A stretch of 51,406 nucleotides of DNA from Octopus bimaculoides (Eukaryota), in the NCBI RefSeq assembly GCF_001194135.2, contig NC_068989.1, positions 68,325,421-68,376,826 on the forward strand. The letters run 5' to 3'. Each line of letters opens with the position of its first letter. Positions within the stretch are counted from its first letter, which is position 1. Of the stretch, positions 24,133-50,411 are shown piece after piece. The notes under the pieces were generated by a model. It was given only the letters and a program-made list of their open reading frames with translations, was not told where the DNA came from and did not search any database. The translations under genes and the position numbers were made by a program.

Positions 24133-26073
24133 AACGAGAAGCGACAATTGGTCGATAAGGGACCAATAGGAAAATTGAAAAATGATGAATTCGATGCAGC
24201 CTATTGGAATACCGACAGCAAAAATATGAATAAAAGACTTTCAGATTCCGTGAAAGATTTACCAATTGGAATGCACGTGCTACATAGAAAAAGAAGTTTC
24301 GACTCATTAGGTGGAGCATTTATGCCAGGTGGAAAAAGAAACTTCGACTCATTAGGTGGGGCATTTATGCCAGGTGGAAAAAGAAACTTCGATTCATTAG
24401 GTGGGGCATTTATGCCGGGTGGAAAAAGAAACTTCGACTCTTTAGGTGGAGCATTTATGCCAGGTGGAAAAAGAAACTTCGACTCTTTAGGTGGAGCTTT
24501 TCTGCCAGGTGGAAAAAGAAACTTCGACTCGTTAGGTGGGGCATTTATGCCAGGTGGAAAAAGAAACTTCGATTCATTAGGTGGGGCTTTTATGCCAGGT
24601 GGAAAAAGAAACTTCGACTCTTTAGGTGGAGCATTTATGCCAGGTGGAAAAAGAAACTTCGATTCCTTAGGTGGGGCTTTTATGCCAGGAGGAAAAAGAA
24701 ACTTCGATTCATTAGGTGGGGCATTTATGCCGGGTGGAAAAAGAAACTTCGACTCATTAGGTGGAGCTTTTATGCCAGGTGGAAAAAGAAACTTCGACTC
24801 ATTGGGTGGAGCATTTATGCCAGGAGGAAAAAGAAACTTCGATTCATTAGGTGGGGCTTTTATGCCAGGAGGAAAAAGAAACTTCGATTCACTAGGTGGG
24901 GCATTTATGCCGGGTGGAAAAAGAAACTTCGACTCATTAGGTGGGGCATTTATGCCAGGTGGAAAAAGAAACTTCGACTCATTAGGTGGAGCTTTTATGC
25001 CAGGTGGAAAAAGAAACTTCGACTCATTGGGTGGTGCATTTATGCCAGGAGGAAAACGTACTTTCGATTCCTTGGGTGGAGGAATTTTACCAATTGAAGG
25101 TAGTATTGATCTAACGAGTGGTTGCTTGGGAAAACGTTCATGCCATTCATTAAGTGGAAGACGTCTATCTGCTGGGAGCAGTGCTGATTCATCGGATGAT
25201 TCCGATGGAAAACGTTCATTTGATTCCTTAGGAGGAGCGTTTATGCCAGGTGGAAAGCGTACTTTCGATTCCTTGGGTGGTGCTTTCATGCCAGTTGGAA
25301 AGAAAAACTTTGACTCGTTAGGGGGTGCTTTTATGCCAGGTGGAAAACGTACTTTCGATTCCTTGGGTGGTGCGTTTATGCCAGGTGGAAAGAGGAACTT
25401 TGACTCTTTGGGTGGAGCTTTTATGCCAGGTGGTAAAAGAAACTTCGACTCGTTAGGTGGGGCATTTATGCCAGGTGGAAAACGTACTTTCGATTCATTA
25501 GGTGGAGCATTTATGCCCGGTGGAAAACGTACTTTCGATTCCTTGGGTGGTGCTTTTATGCCAGGTGGAAAAAGGAACTTCGACTCATTAGGTGGAGCTT
25601 TTATGCCCGGTGGTAAACGTACTTTCGATTCCTTGGGTGGTGCTTTTATGCCAGGTTCAAAGAAGAACTTTGATTCATTAGGTGGCGCTTTTATGCCAGG
25701 CGGAAAGAGACAATCTGATTCGTTAGGGGGTGGAAAGAGACAGTTTGACTCATTAGGGGGAGCATTTATGCCTGGTGGAAAGAGACAGTTTGACTCGTTA
25801 GGCGGAGCATTTATGCCTGGTGGAAAGAGACAGTTTGACTCGTTAGGCGGAGCATTTATGCCTGGTGGAAAGAGACAGTTTGACTCGTTAGGCGGAGCAT
25901 TTCTACCAAATATAAAGAGACAAGATGACAGGCCATATTTATGGCAACCATTTGACTCGTTAGGGGGAGCATTTCTACCTGGTGGAAAGAGAGACTCTGA
26001 CTCGTTAAGTGGCGCGATTTTGACAGAATCAGCTGAAAAACAAGGTAGTGGTGATTCAGACCTGAAAAACTAA
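24133..26073 (+). CDS. Terminal coding exon of a multi-copy neuropeptide precursor (FLGamide/orcokinin-B-like, FCAP-related; xFDSLGGAFMPG-amide peptides)
   Basis: Stop-free 646-codon frame with a 45-nt/15-aa repeat, each unit ending in G-K-R (amidation Gly plus dibasic site). Variation between units is mostly synonymous. The track's start at 24127 is a TTG inside a polypyrimidine tract ending TTGCAG (AG 24131-24132), so the exon starts at 24133 in phase 0. Stop TAA 26071-26073. No Met or signal peptide at its N-terminus. Confidence 0.93.
   Translation, partial: NEKRQLVDKGPIGKLKNDEFDAAYWNTDSKNMNKRLSDSVKDLPIGMHVLHRKRSFDSLGGAFMPGGKRNFDSLGGAFMPGGKRNFDSLGGAFMPGGKRNFDSLGGAFMPGGKRNFDSLGGAFLPGGKRNFDSLGGAFMPGGKRNFDSLGGAFMPGGKRNFDSLGGAFMPGGKRNFDSLGGAFMPGGKRNFDSLGGAFMPGGKRNFDSLGGAFMPGGKRNFDSLGGAFMPGGKRNFDSLGGAFMPGGKRNFDSLGGAFMPGGKRNFDSLGGAFMPGGKRNFDSLGGAFMPGGKRNFDSLGGAFMPGGKRTFDSLGGGILPIEGSIDLTSGCLGKRSCHSLSGRRLSAGSSADSSDDSDGKRSFDSLGGAFMPGGKRTFDSLGGAFMPVGKKNFDSLGGAFMPGGKRTFDSLGGAFMPGGKRNFDSLGGAFMPGGKRNFDSLGGAFMPGGKRTFDSLGGAFMPGGKRTFDSLGGAFMPGGKRNFDSLGGAFMPGGKRTFDSLGGAFMPGSKKNFDSLGGAFMPGGKRQSDSLGGGKRQFDSLGGAFMPGGKRQFDSLGGAFMPGGKRQFDSLGGAFMPGGKRQFDSLGGAFLPNIKRQDDRPYLWQPFDSLGGAFLPGGKRDSDSLSGAILTESAEKQGSGDSDLKN
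24295..25992 (+). repeat. Coding tandem repeat, 45-nt unit, in three sub-blocks
   Basis: 17 units at 24295-25059, divergent spacer 25060-25215, 11 units at 25216-25710, Q-starting block 25711-25992. Confidence 0.95.
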
Positions 26074-26085
26074 AACAGCATTATC

Positions 26086-26091
26086 AATAAA
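26086..26091 (+). promoter_or_regulatory. Candidate polyadenylation signal AATAAA
   Basis: AATAAA 12 nt after the precursor stop codon. The hexamer is common in AT-rich DNA, so its use is unproven. Confidence 0.35.
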
Positions 26092-26646
26092 TGTTGCCCT
26101 GTGGAATGGATTAACACATAATAACTTGAGGAACAGTTGATATTTACAATACTGTTTCAACGAAAATTGAAAACAAAGCCTTTCTTTATTATCCCTTCAA
26201 GAGTAGAGGAAGTTTTCTCACAATCACATACACTTACTATCAAATACATTCAGAACTTCAACTTCTGTTTTGATTTATTTACTGCTAATAATATCAACAG
26301 AAATGTAAAAGATCTACTCTTTCTAAAGATGTACTCTTAATACAACATCTCTGATAACAATTCACAACAGCTACGTCTGAATCAGCGAGAGCAATGAAAG
26401 AAAACAGTACTGTGTTTTTGGCGTTCGAAACCAGTAATGAAAGTTCGCGAAAGACTTTTGAAGTTTCTATCACTATTTTTTCCCAACACAGTTGCTTCAT
26501 TTTCCTTCATGTCCTTATTTTTAAAATTTTTTTTCTAATAAATCCTAACTGTTATTAATGGCATCGTAGTTAGTGTCTTGATCTATTTTTGTTCTGGAAT
26601 TGAAAAAAAAACCTTTTCATTAGTGAATTTCCCGTATATGTATATG

Positions 26647-26710
<64 letters not shown>
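26647..26710. repeat. (GT)n microsatellite
   Basis: Seen directly, about 570 nt downstream of the precursor stop. Confidence 0.97.
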
Positions 26711-26713
<3 letters not shown>

Positions 26714-28450: not shown

Positions 28451-28662
28451 TTTGGGTTTCAAATTTTGGCACATGGGTAGCAATTTCGGGGGAAGGGATA
28501 AAACGATTTCATCGATCCCAGTAATCAACTGGTACTTATTTTATCGACCCCGAAAGGCAAAGACGACTTCGACAGCATTTGAACTCAGAATGTAATGACG
28601 GACGAGATGCTGCTAATTATTTTGGCCGGCGTGTTAACGATTCTACCAGTTCGTCGCCTTTG
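28451..28662 (-). mobile_element. Full-length SINE family A with 11-bp TSD
   Basis: Complete reverse-complement head and body. Identical TTAGCGAAAGT at 28440-28450 and 28663-28673. Confidence 0.9.
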
Positions 28663-28779
28663 TTAGCGAAAGTATTAAAATACCTAAACTTTTACTTCTG
28701 ATTTTATTGTTAACACATCTTATGACAAATCAACTAAAAATAACACATTTATAAAATCCCATGCAGTTTTATATTTGGC

Positions 28780-33992: not shown

Positions 33993-34306
33993 NNNNNNNN
34001 NNNNNNNNNNNNNNNNNNNNNNNNNNNNNNNNNNNNNNNNNNNNNNNNNNNNNNNNNNNNNNNNNNNNNNNNNNNNNNNNNNNNNNNNNNNNNNNNNNNN
34101 NNNNNNNNNNNNNNNNNNNNNNNNNNNNNNNNNNNNNNNNNNNNNNNNNNNNNNNNNNNNNNNNNNNNNNNNNNNNNNNNNNNNNNNNNNNNNNNNNNNN
34201 NNNNNNNNNNNNNNNNNNNNNNNNNNNNNNNNNNNNNNNNNNNNNNNNNNNNNNNNNNNNNNNNNNNNNNNNNNNNNNNNNNNNNNNNNNNNNNNNNNNN
34301 NNNNNG

Positions 34307-35335
34307 ACACAGACAGACTGTACGTACCAAGAAAAGAGGAGGAAGAGGACTTATTGGATGCGAACACAGAATTAGATGAGAAGAAAACAACATAGTATGG
34401 TATGTAAAAAGTGCTACAAAACCGCTATTATGAGAAGTAAGAAGTTCAGGCTTGTGTAGGATGAAAGATTGCAAGGATAAAGCACTATACAATAAATTGA
34501 AAACGAATGAAACTGAAAATAGGTGGGTAAAGAAAAGAATGCATGATTATATGGATGTTGAAGATCAGACAGAGAAAAAAGATGGCTGTGGATGACTAAA
34601 AGTGATTTAAAACCGGAAACGGCGACTCTAATCTGTGCTGCCCAAGAGCAAGCGCTAAGAACAAACTACATAAAATACAGAATTGACAACACTGCAGAAA
34701 GTGATAAGTGCAGAAGCTGTGGACAAATTGGTGAAACCGTATGGCATATTACCAGCCAATGTACGCCACTAGCCCAGAAGGAATATAAGAGACGACACGA
34801 CAATATAGCCAGGCTTGTCCATTGGACATTTTGCAACAGGTATGGACTTGAGAGAGCAAAAAATTGGTACGACCACAAACTTGAAGGCATCGTCGAAAAT
34901 AGAAATGTAATGATCCTATGGGATTTTATGATTCAGTGCAGCCATGAGATAGAGAGTAGGAAGCCGAGAATGAAAAAAAAAACTATGCTGGTTCATAGAT
35001 ATAGCATTCCCAGCTGACAACAAGGTATGCGATAAGGAAGAAAGAAAAGTCGATAGATATGACAGGTTAGCTTGGGAAATTAAGGAGTTGTGGTCTATGA
35101 GAAAGGTAGCAGTAGTACCAATAATTGTCGGAACCCTGGGAACAGTGAGAAAAATTCTCGAAAATTACGTGGAACAAATAGGGGCTGCAATAAGCGTGGA
35201 GCACTGGCAGAAAACTGCTTGGAACCACTCGATTTCCCCGGAAGGTGCTCGAAAATAAGAGGTATTACCTTAGTTCACTGGTAGTGAACAGCTGAAACTG
35301 TAGTACATCTCCAGCGTTAGAAGCTGTGCAAAGGC
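34307..35335 (+). mobile_element. Degenerate R4/Dong-type LINE 3' portion
   Basis: DRLYVPRKE, LKPETATLICAAQEQALRTNY, CRSCGQIGETVWHITSQC (CX2CX8HX4C), EYKRRHDNIARLVHW, VMILWDF. Ends in (AAT)n. Confidence 0.9.
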
Positions 35336-49388: not shown

Positions 49389-50411
49389 GCATATATACAT
49401 GCATATATGTATACGTATATACATATATACATATATATNNNNNNNNNNNNNNNNNNNNNNNNNNNNNNNNNNNNNNNNNNNNNNNNNNNNNNNNNNNNNN
49501 NNNNNNNNNNNNNNNNNNNNNNNNNNNNNNNNNNNNNNNNNNNNNNNNNNNNNNNNNNNNNNNNNNNNNNNNNNNNNNNNNNNNNNNNNNNNNNNNNNNN
49601 NNNNNNNNNNNNNNNNNNNNNNNNNNNNNNNNNNNNNNNNNNNNNNNNNNNNNNNNNNNNNNNNNNNNNNNNNNNNNNNNNNNNNNNNNNNNNNNNNNNN
49701 NNNNNNNNNNNNNNNNNNNNNNNNNNNNNNNNNNNNNNNNNNNNNNNNNNNNNNNNNNNNNNNNNNNNNNNNNNNNNNNNNNNNNNNNNNNNNNNNNNNN
49801 NNNNNNNNNNNNNNNNNNNNNNNNNNNNNNNNNNNNNNNNNNNNNNNNNNNNNNNNNNNNNNNNNNNNNNNNNNNNNNNATCTTCTTTTCAAGTGAAATT
49901 CTTCACTGATATCGAAAAGGTGAAAACAAGCAATGTTAATTCTCTAAATGAAGTATTAACAGTAACTGCACGATAAAGTGTAGTATATTGCCACTTAAGT
50001 GTGGCTGACCCCTAGGGGTGGATGTTACTGTTGCTTTTAGCCCCAGGAGGACATCTCCTCCAGCTGGCTTATCGACACACGACTGTGTCCTGTTTGCCAA
50101 GGGTAGTTATCCCTCTCACCATATATATATACATATATATATACATATATATATACATATATATACACACACATACATAAAGTACTCCTGAAAATATACA
50201 AATACTTGAAACTATCGGACTCTGTTTTGTTGTCTATGAGTGACATTGTAAAATAAACAGAAGACACGTTTTCATGTTTCCTTGCATCTAGTGAAGATAT
50301 TTAATTTAGGAATTCAGTAAAGGCTTTAAGCTTTAGGTTATACACAATAGTATATGTACATGTATAAAATACTTGAATTTATATATATCTATATATAGAA
50401 CATTATTTCAT

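What the first reader, a model, noticed from the sequence alone, without database searches (positions are those of the whole stretch)
24133..26073. Highly amplified xFDSLGGAFMPG-amide neuropeptide precursor (34 FDSLGG units in one exon)
Seen: 34 FDSLGG-containing units; 20 would give the identical NFDSLGGAFMPG-amide, plus SFD (2), TFD (3) and QFD (3) versions with the same C-terminus. Known: G-K-R is the convertase/PAM amidation signature, and the DSLGG core is shared with Sepia FLGamide (renamed orcokinin B-like), Aplysia FCAP (xLDSLGG) and insect orcokinin B. Inference: this is the octopus member with an FMPG-amide instead of an FLG-amide ending. That could mean a lineage-specific peptide; I do not know its receptor.
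Basis: partly seen in the sequence, partly recalled or inferred. Interest (0 to 1): 0.78.

Follow-up and report, generated by a model that had tools for sequence, protein, structure and literature searches.

The report
Octopus FCAP neuropeptide precursor exon
This is the large final exon of the gene for feeding circuit-activating peptide (FCAP, also called orcokinin-B-like or FLGamide-like), which encodes 34 tandem copies of a short brain peptide; the repeat is real and under selection, but the peptide has already been reported from Octopus bimaculoides, so it is a known gene.

Summary
Positions 24133-26073 (+) form one open exon with a strong splice acceptor. It holds 34 FDSLGG units: 20 NFDSLGGAFMPGG, and 3 T-, 3 Q- and 2 S- variants, all flanked by KR or KK.

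The repeat codes for protein. The 33 in-register 45-nt units differ from their consensus by 121 synonymous and 21 non-synonymous codons. The 20 units with identical amino acids have 16 different DNA spellings.

The best true homologues are molluscan FCAP precursors: Plakobranchus 'feeding circuit activating peptides', Wirenia and Acanthochitona FCAP (about 55% identity), and Aplysia FCAP (34%).

[quoted passage not shown] The gene has also been used as an in-situ marker in octopus brain, optic gland and arm nerve cord.

Three small residues remain. The genome shows more copies (20 of the major form, 28 ending FMPG-amide). Standard processing of GGKR predicts a 12-mer Gly-amide, not the published 11-mer. 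No signal-peptide exon was found in the 24 kb upstream, and read data were not available. The receptor is unknown.

The parts
24114..24132 (+). Polypyrimidine tract and 3' splice acceptor (ttttcttttttaattgCAG); the intron is phase 0
   Evidence: Sequence read. The in-frame stop TAA at 24124-24126 means the coding frame can only be entered by splicing at 24132/24133. The splice is inferred and not confirmed by reads.
24133..24294 (+). N-terminal propeptide part of the exon (54 aa: NEKRQLVDKGPIGKLKNDEFDAAYWNTDSKNMNKRLSDSVKDLPIGMHVLHRKR), with KR and RKR cleavage sites and no hydrophobic signal sequence
   Evidence: Translation. An early dibasic site after the signal peptide is also seen in gastropod FCAP precursors.
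24295..25059 (+). Repeat block A: 17 units of 45 nt (1 SFDSLGGAFMPGGKR, 15 NFDSLGGAFMPGGKR, 1 NFDSLGGAFLPGGKR), 90-95% identical over 300-nt windows
25060..25215 (+). Divergent unit and spacer: TFDSLGGGILPIEGSIDLTSGCLGKR, SCHSLSGRR, and the acidic spacer LSAGSSADSSDDSDGKR
   Evidence: the coordinates are derived from the unit starts.
25216..25710 (+). Repeat block B: 11 units mixing S/T/N first residues (including TFDSLGGAFMPVGKK and TFDSLGGAFMPGSKK), about 83% identical to block A at the DNA level
25711..25992 (+). Q block: QSDSLGGGKR, 3 QFDSLGGAFMPGGKR (98% identical DNA), QFDSLGGAFLPNIKR, and the N-terminally extended QDDRPYLWQPFDSLGGAFLPGGKR
25993..26073 (+). C-terminal peptide DSDSLSGAILTESAEKQGSGDSDLKN and the stop codon TAA (26071-26073)
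26086..26091 (+). AATAAA, a candidate polyadenylation signal 13 nt after the stop (a second AATAAA lies at 26537-26542)
   Evidence: Sequence read. This is inferred only.

Best explanation
Positions 24133-26073 are the last, peptide-bearing exon of the cephalopod FCAP gene (feeding circuit-activating peptide, the same family that Sepia workers call FLGamide / So-orcokinin B). A signal-peptide exon further upstream, not found in this window, is spliced to 24133. The proprotein enters the secretory pathway. Prohormone convertases cut after each KR/KK, a carboxypeptidase removes the basic residues, and peptidylglycine alpha-amidating monooxygenase uses the last Gly as the amide donor. One precursor molecule would then release 28 near-identical 12-mers, x-FDSLGGAFMPG-NH2 (20 with N; 3 T; 3 Q, probably pyro-Glu; 2 S), plus about 8 variant peptides. 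The array grew by unequal crossing-over of 1-4-unit blocks and is held constant at the peptide level by purifying selection. Shown here: the exon, the frame, the repeat anatomy, the selection pattern and the homology. Taken from the literature: transcription in octopus optic gland, brain and axial nerve cord, and the peptide core NFDSLGGAFMP in O. bimaculoides. Inferred: the processing steps, the exact mature C-terminus, and action through a still unknown receptor on feeding and/or reproductive-tract circuits, by analogy with Aplysia FCAP and Sepia FLGamide.
For: One open frame of 646 codons follows a good acceptor. There are 34 FDSLGG units, each 13 residues plus a dibasic pair. Across 33 in-register units, differences by codon position are 19/14/135, with 121 synonymous and 21 non-synonymous codon differences. 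The 20 amino-acid-identical units have 16 distinct DNA versions. A HMMER scan of 1.84 billion representatives finds as true homologues P0003 (E 8e-39, 49% identity), P0004, P0008, P0012 and P0014, among others, all with x[LF]DSLGG units between KR sites. P0003 is named 'feeding circuit activating peptides [Plakobranchus ocellatus]'. BLASTP against published sequences gives Wirenia FCAP 54.5% over 398 aa (2e-79), Acanthochitona FCAP 55% over 240 aa (2e-69) and Aplysia FCAP 34% over 424 aa (3e-33). These are better than the octopus paralogous families: orcokinin-A-like 1.6e-25 and pedal peptide 1.7e-22. [quoted passage not shown] FCAP mRNA has been reported in the unmated optic gland, in the peduncle complex and optic lobe by ISH, and in the O. 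bocki axial nerve cord by HCR. PMC9410093 equates the O. bimaculoides 'FCAP-like' XP_014768639.1 with Sepia So-orcokinin B.
Against: No signal-peptide exon with a phase-0 donor was found in 1..24100. It may lie beyond the window's 5' end or in one of the N-runs. No reads could be laid on the window, so neither the splice nor expression is shown for this locus. No cephalopod protein is present in either protein database, and the published FCAP sequence is illegible in the held text. Identity with the published octopus gene therefore rests on the 11-residue peptide core, not on a full alignment. The published count of the major form is 16 against 20 here. The species of the window was not verified. 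No mature peptide has been detected by mass spectrometry in any paper I could read.
Confidence: 0.9

Rival explanations
1. It is a second, silent or decaying copy (pseudogene or unexpressed paralogue) of the FCAP gene that lacks its signal-peptide exon, and the expressed gene lies elsewhere.
For: No signal-peptide exon was found in 24 kb upstream. The copy number of the major form differs from the published transcript-derived sequence, 20 against 16. Expression of this locus was not testable.
Against: The frame is intact over 646 codons, with an intact acceptor and an AATAAA. Synonymous changes outnumber non-synonymous ones 121 to 21, and no unit is disrupted. Short-read transcriptome assemblies commonly collapse such repeats, which would explain 16 against 20. 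No second copy lies in the window.
Confidence: 0.05
2. The antisense ORF 24201..25289 (362 aa, a PPGINAPPNESKF repeat) is the real product, a proline-rich repeat protein.
For: It is open for 362 codons and shares its third codon position with the + frame, so third-position variation alone does not discriminate between them.
Against: In that frame the same substitutions give 91 synonymous and 64 non-synonymous changes and 20 distinct units, against 121/21 and 9 distinct units in the + frame. It is open over block A and the spacer (24201-25289) but closed by a stop at the start of block B. It has no homologues, whereas the + frame matches named FCAP precursors.
Confidence: 0.01
3. It is a non-coding minisatellite whose open frame is fortuitous.
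For: It is a 45-nt tandem array in a microsatellite-rich, AT-rich region.
Against: Variation is concentrated at third codon positions (19/14/135). Amino-acid-identical units have up to 22% DNA divergence. The dibasic and Gly amidation sites are conserved in every unit. The non-repetitive flanks are also in frame. There is homology to FCAP precursors.
Confidence: 0.01

Closest known systems
Octopus bimaculoides FCAP prepropeptide (optic-gland transcriptomes; bioRxiv 10.1101/2023.11.27.568875, Suppl. Fig. [quoted passage not shown]
   Same: The peptide core NFDSLGGAFMP is identical and is the major repeated form. Both are multi-copy amidated precursors. I take this to be the same gene or its ortholog in a close species.
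   Different: The published text counts 16 copies of the major form and calls it an 11-residue amide. The window has 20 copies (28 ending FMPG-amide, 34 units in all), and canonical processing of GGKR predicts a 12-mer ending Gly-NH2. A full alignment was not possible, because the sequence is illegible in the held text and is absent from the protein databases.
Sepia officinalis FLGamide / So-orcokinin B precursors A and B (PMC9410093)
   Same: Both have the FDSLGG core, a Gly-amide C-terminus, the same length after the core (the antibody epitope FDSLGGGSFLG-NH2 against FDSLGGAFMPG-NH2), and some N-terminally extended forms. The Sepia gene is expressed in the CNS. The Sepia peptides were detected by MS and are myoactive on the oviduct and nidamental gland.
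   Different: Sepia has 7-8 copies of the main amidated form plus PYY-ended peptides and a DSLGGG motif. Here there are 28 copies, mostly DSLGGA, the ending is FMPG rather than SFLG, and there are no PYY peptides.
Aplysia californica FCAP precursor (NP_001191518.1; Sweedler et al. 2002, cited)
   Same: Both carry many tandem 13-residue peptides x[LF]DSLGG... between KR/KKR sites. Identity is 34% over 424 aa, E 3e-33.
   Different: The Aplysia peptides end in FQVHGW and have no C-terminal Gly in the precursor (HGWKR), so no amidation is predicted from the sequence. Acidic spacers separate many units.
Aplacophoran and chiton FCAP precursors (Wirenia argentea, Gymnomenia pellucida, Acanthochitona crinita; PMC6425005 Suppl. 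Note S4)
   Same: These give the highest identity (about 55%). The units are back to back without spacers. Solenogasters share the S/G-AFMP core, and chitons have a predicted amidated end (FAIHPGKR).
   Different: The solenogaster peptides end in D/E/Q and are not amidated. Chiton peptides end in HP-NH2. Copy numbers are lower.
Lottia gigantea FCAP precursor, 28 copies, the maximum reported in PMC6425005
   Same: It shows extreme tandem amplification of one peptide form.
   Different: This exon has 34-36 units, so it is at or above the published upper range of 6-28. The Lottia peptide sequence is GLDDLGGVNVHGF.

Membership tests
FCAP (feeding circuit-activating peptide) precursor, Lophotrochozoa | Multiple tandem copies of a peptide of about 13 residues, bounded by dibasic cleavage sites | tested here: met
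   There are 33 in-register units of 13 residues plus KR/KK, and 3 divergent units. PMC6425005 states that FCAPs are usually 13 aa long, with 6-28 copies.
FCAP (feeding circuit-activating peptide) precursor, Lophotrochozoa | Conserved N-terminal motif x-[FL]-D-[ST]-L-G-G in each peptide | tested here: met
   FDSLGG x34 and DSLGG x35. The same motif occurs in Aplysia, chiton, solenogaster and scaphopod FCAPs.
FCAP (feeding circuit-activating peptide) precursor, Lophotrochozoa | Sequence similarity to bona fide FCAP precursors greater than to the paralogous repetitive families (pedal peptide/orcokinin A-like) | tested here: met
   BLASTP gives Wirenia 2e-79, Acanthochitona 2e-69 and Aplysia 3e-33, against O. 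vulgaris orcokinin-A-like 1.6e-25 and pedal peptide 1.7e-22. The best true library hit is named FCAP. E-values are inflated by repetition, because unrelated proteins with a 15-residue period also score. The motif, not the E-value, carries the argument.
FCAP (feeding circuit-activating peptide) precursor, Lophotrochozoa | N-terminal signal peptide (secretory precursor) | tested here: inconclusive
   The exon itself has none. No ATG, hydrophobic core and phase-0 donor combination was found in 1..24100. A weak candidate at 11417 (MMCRMMLSSIDLLMILISIF|GTAAGA) is not convincing. In one search the FCAP entry is illegible in the held text; a signal peptide is stated only for the other precursors (FMRFamide, FxRIamide, myomodulin).
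FCAP (feeding circuit-activating peptide) precursor, Lophotrochozoa | Neuronal or neuroendocrine expression and processed peptides detectable | not testable with these tools
The literature shows octopus FCAP mRNA in the optic gland, peduncle complex and axial nerve cord. I found no MS evidence for the octopus peptides.
Cephalopod FLGamide / So-orcokinin B (Sepia) | Hexapeptide DS(L/I)GGG | tested here: inconclusive
   Only 2 units carry DSLGGG (TFDSLGGGILP..., QSDSLGGG); 33 carry DSLGGA. The motif definition comes from PMC9410093.
Cephalopod FLGamide / So-orcokinin B (Sepia) | C-terminal FLG-amide or PYY ends | tested here: not met
   The ends are FMPG-, FLPG- or FMPV-amide, and there is no PYY peptide. 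The relation is one of orthology with a changed C-terminus. This is not the Sepia peptide type in the strict sense.
Arthropod orcokinin B | Encoded with orcokinin A by alternative splicing of one gene; DSLGGG-containing peptides | not tested
   No orcokinin-A-type (xFDxIxxxxF) units occur in the window. Insect DSLGGGHLI-type precursors do appear among the weaker hits (P0010 Homalodisca). The relation between FCAP and orcokinin B is a published proposal that I did not resolve here.

The most novel reading that the evidence does not exclude
The genomic locus may show that octopus FCAP is more amplified than the published transcript-derived sequence (34 units, 28 of them identical at the C-terminus, against 16 of the major form). 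That would be the largest FCAP array on record. The true mature ligand may be the 12-mer x-FDSLGGAFMPG-NH2 rather than the published 11-mer. If copy number varies between individuals or species, and this ligand acts through a still unidentified receptor in the optic-gland/feeding switch, the locus would be a handle on dosage evolution of a neuropeptide tied to octopus maternal fasting.
Probability: 0.25. Interest if true: 0.45.

Novelty: already known. Interest (0 to 1): 0.2.

Why it matters
FCAP is one of the neuropeptide mRNAs that fall sharply in the octopus optic gland when females switch from feeding to brooding, and it serves as a marker of peptidergic neurons. The genomic exon adds a clean reference for that gene. 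It gives the full unit count, the three sub-blocks that record how the array grew, and clear evidence of peptide-level purifying selection. It also gives exact predicted masses for peptidomics, and it flags a discrepancy over the mature C-terminus (12-mer Gly-amide against the published 11-mer amide). It does not reveal a new kind of molecule. The receptor of the FCAP/orcokinin-B group remains unidentified in the literature I could search.

Tried and rejected
1. The search for homologous proteins with the whole ORF and with the N-terminal 84 aa returned nothing. The word index seems to miss this family, so I give this absence no weight.

2. The look-up of encoding contigs with the exact ORF found nothing on record.

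I did not try to reach read data by any other route.

4. The top hits of the representative scan (P0001, P0002, P0005, P0006, P0009, P0016) are unrelated proteins with repeats of about 15 residues. I rejected them as periodicity artefacts.

5. Three scans for a signal-peptide exon, with increasingly relaxed thresholds, found only microsatellite-encoded '[12 protein letters not shown]' ORFs and weak candidates at 1444, 2408 and 11417. None was accepted.

6. Pfam has no model that matches the precursor.

7. I searched for a paralogous DSLGG-type gene elsewhere in the window and found none.

8. Rfam and tRNA scans of the window were empty.

9. The supplements of PMC9410093 and PMC9815951 and the optic-gland preprint hold no usable sequences. 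PMC6757975 (Aplysia FCAP) is not held.

10. PMC6425005 lists FCAP in six of eight mollusc classes. Its Suppl. Note S4 lists no cephalopod, and its supplements contain no 'FMPGG'. That paper therefore missed the cephalopod gene.

Full report
**Observation**

The + strand carries a single long ORF, 24127..26073. Directly before it lies an in-frame TAA (24124-24126), followed by a polypyrimidine tract ending in CAG at 24130-24132. The stop is TAA at 26071-26073, and an AATAAA follows 13 nt later.

Counting on the translation gives 34 FDSLGG, 35 DSLGG and 36 DSL[GS]G motifs. Splitting at dibasic sites gives:
- 20 NFDSLGGAFMPGG
- 3 TFDSLGGAFMPGG
- 3 QFDSLGGAFMPGG
- 2 SFDSLGGAFMPGG
- single variants with FLPGG, FMPVG, FMPGS and FLPNI ends
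- an N-terminally extended QDDRPYLWQPFDSLGGAFLPGG
- a long TFDSLGGGILPIEGSIDLTSGCLG
- a short QSDSLGGG

Tandem Repeats Finder sees a 45-nt period with 31 copies at 77% nucleotide matches, plus higher-order periods of 90 and 135 nt.

**Is it coding, and on which strand?**

I placed the 33 in-register 45-nt units against their consensus.
- Differences fall 19/14/135 on codon positions 1/2/3.
- There are 121 synonymous and 21 non-synonymous codon differences.
- The 20 units that encode the identical 15 residues exist in 16 different DNA versions (mean pairwise identity 90%, minimum 78%).

This is the signature of purifying selection on the peptide. It is not the signature of a homogenised satellite.

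The antisense ORF 24201..25289 (a PPGINAPPNESKF repeat) happens to share its wobble position with the sense frame. In that frame the same substitutions are 91 synonymous and 64 non-synonymous, giving 20 distinct units. It is also closed by a stop at the start of block B. The other four frames contain 27-61 stops. The + frame is therefore the real one.

**Anatomy**

| Coordinates | Content |
|---|---|
| 24133-24294 | 54-residue non-repetitive propeptide with KR and RKR sites and no hydrophobic leader |
| 24295-25059 | Block A: 17 units, 90-95% identical DNA |
| 25060-25215 | Divergent unit plus a Cys-containing piece and an acidic spacer |
| 25216-25710 | Block B: 11 units with S/T/N first residues, about 83% identical to block A |
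| 25711-25992 | Q block, three units 98% identical, plus one extended unit |
| 25993-26070 | C-terminal peptide |

Exact duplicates at offsets of 4 and 7 units, and the 90/135-nt super-periods, indicate growth by unequal crossing-over of multi-unit blocks.

**What it is**

Neither word-indexed protein search found anything. The exhaustive HMMER scan of 1.84 billion representatives gave 216 hits.
- The top few hits are unrelated proteins with repeats of about 15 residues. E-values are therefore inflated by periodicity.
- The next group are unmistakable homologues with x[LF]DSLGG units between KR sites: P0003, P0004, P0007, P0008, P0011, P0012, P0014 and P0015, among others.
- P0003 is named 'feeding circuit activating peptides [Plakobranchus ocellatus]'. 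P0004 is from Elysia and P0012 from Lymnaea.
- P0010, a weaker hit of the DSLGGGHLI type, is from the insect Homalodisca.

I ran BLASTP against sequences printed in Supplementary Note S4 of PMC6425005.

| Subject | Identity | E-value |
|---|---|---|
| Wirenia FCAP | 54.5% over 398 aa | 2e-79 |
| Acanthochitona FCAP | 55% over 240 aa | 2e-69 |
| a neomeniomorph FCAP | 53% | 2e-52 |
| Aplysia FCAP | 34% over 424 aa | 3e-33 |
| O. vulgaris orcokinin-A-like | not recorded | 1.6e-25 |
| O. vulgaris pedal peptide | not recorded | 1.7e-22 |

The last two are the octopus paralogous repetitive families, and they score lower. The unit length of 13 residues before the dibasic pair is the canonical FCAP length. 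The locus is therefore an FCAP precursor.

PMC9410093 argues that cephalopod 'FCAP-like' proteins (O. bimaculoides XP_014768639.1, Loligo) and Sepia FLGamide are the same thing, and renames them orcokinin B. The Sepia epitope FDSLGGGSFLG-NH2 has the same length as FDSLGGAFMPG-NH2.

**Already described?**

Yes. No paper's main text contains 'DSLGGAF' or 'FMPGa'. [quoted passage not shown] The prepropeptides there were predicted from optic-gland transcriptomes. The sequence itself is illegible in the held copy.

Octopus FCAP has also been reported in other contexts:
- It is enriched in unmated optic glands and drops after mating.
- It was mapped by ISH in the peduncle complex and optic lobe.
- It was used as an HCR marker that is abundant in the O. 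bocki axial nerve cord.
- A Loligo 'FCAP-like' transcript marks epidermal clusters.

**What is left that is not in the literature I could read**

1. The genome holds 20 copies of the major form, 28 FMPG-amide peptides and 34-36 units. That is more than the published 16 and at or above the family's reported range of 6-28. The difference may be transcript-assembly collapse, a species difference or a polymorphism.
2. With GGKR, orthodox processing (convertase, carboxypeptidase, PAM; established knowledge) leaves ...MPG-NH2. That is a 12-mer of [M+H]+ 1211.551, not an 11-mer amide of 1154.530. No MS data exist to decide between them.
3. The AFMP core is shared with solenogaster FCAPs, and predicted amidation is shared with chiton FCAPs. 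The C-terminus is therefore not an octopus invention.
4. No receptor has been reported.

**Gaps**

- No signal-peptide exon with a phase-0 donor exists in 1..24100. It probably lies beyond the window, or less likely in one of five upstream N-runs.
- Read data were not available for this window, so splicing and expression of this very locus are inferred.
- The species of the window was not verified. The identical 11-residue core ties it to Octopus FCAP.

**Verdict**

This is a real, well-preserved and ordinary member of a known neuropeptide family, already reported in Octopus. Interest is low.

Noticed in passing
window 24201-25289 (-): A 362-aa antisense ORF (PPGINAPPNESKF repeat) runs through block A. 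Its third codon position coincides with that of the sense frame, so the usual 'variation at position 3' argument cannot separate the two strands. Only the synonymous/non-synonymous counts do (121/21 sense against 91/64 antisense).
   Followed up: yes
bioRxiv 10.1101/2023.11.27.568875 Suppl. 2, compared with window 24295-25992: The published prediction of the mature peptide (the undecapeptide NFDSLGGAFMP-amide, 16 copies) differs from what the genomic GGKR sites imply under standard amidation (a 12-mer ending Gly-NH2, 20 copies of the N-form).
   Followed up: partly
window 3621-3840, 8049-8190, 15168-15688, 18522-18697, 19445-19953, 33993-34305, 42135-42272, 47400-48037, 49439-49879 and four short runs: There are thirteen N-runs of 10-638 nt (3200 N in all), almost all embedded in microsatellites of 8-9-nt period ('IYIYIY/CVCVCV' in translation). 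They produce spurious long ORFs and spurious perfect inverted repeats in the tools.
   Followed up: partly
window 16626-17021 (+), 20322-20618 (+), 34562-35255 (+): Several stop-free stretches have related motifs (…PDIVVKDHEEKKCFLIDVSIPADDNV…, …CRSCGQIGETVWHITSQC…). From memory they look like C-terminal parts of non-LTR retrotransposon ORFs. Pfam gave no hit.
   Followed up: partly
window 3882-4553 (-): Two adjacent open stretches (…LVTGDEKWNFYRN…, …EFYIDGIKKCVNRWKEVIDNQGKYIDD) resemble a decayed mariner-type transposase, from memory. Pfam gave no hit.
   Followed up: partly
window 12487-12650 / 21748-21911; 28559-28663 / 42553-42657 / 43229-43398 / 46034-46203 / 37468-37581: A dispersed repeat family of 105-170 nt (75-86% identity, in both orientations), probably a SINE-like element. 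The copies translate to recurring '…RPRKDERQSRL…NLNSE…' strings.
   Followed up: no
window 26649-26711: A perfect (TG)31 microsatellite lies about 600 nt downstream of the stop codon.
   Followed up: no
(library hits P0001, P0002, P0005, P0006, P0009, P0016): With a 15-residue tandem query, HMMER's best E-values (1e-43 to 1e-25) went to unrelated proteins that merely have repeats of similar period. The true FCAP homologues ranked third and lower.
   Followed up: yes
PMC6425005 Suppl. Note S4: The broad mollusc survey reports FCAP in six of eight classes. Its Suppl. Note S4 lists no cephalopod sequence, although it included O. bimaculoides proteins and an O. vulgaris transcriptome. The cephalopod gene was evidently missed there.
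   Followed up: partly
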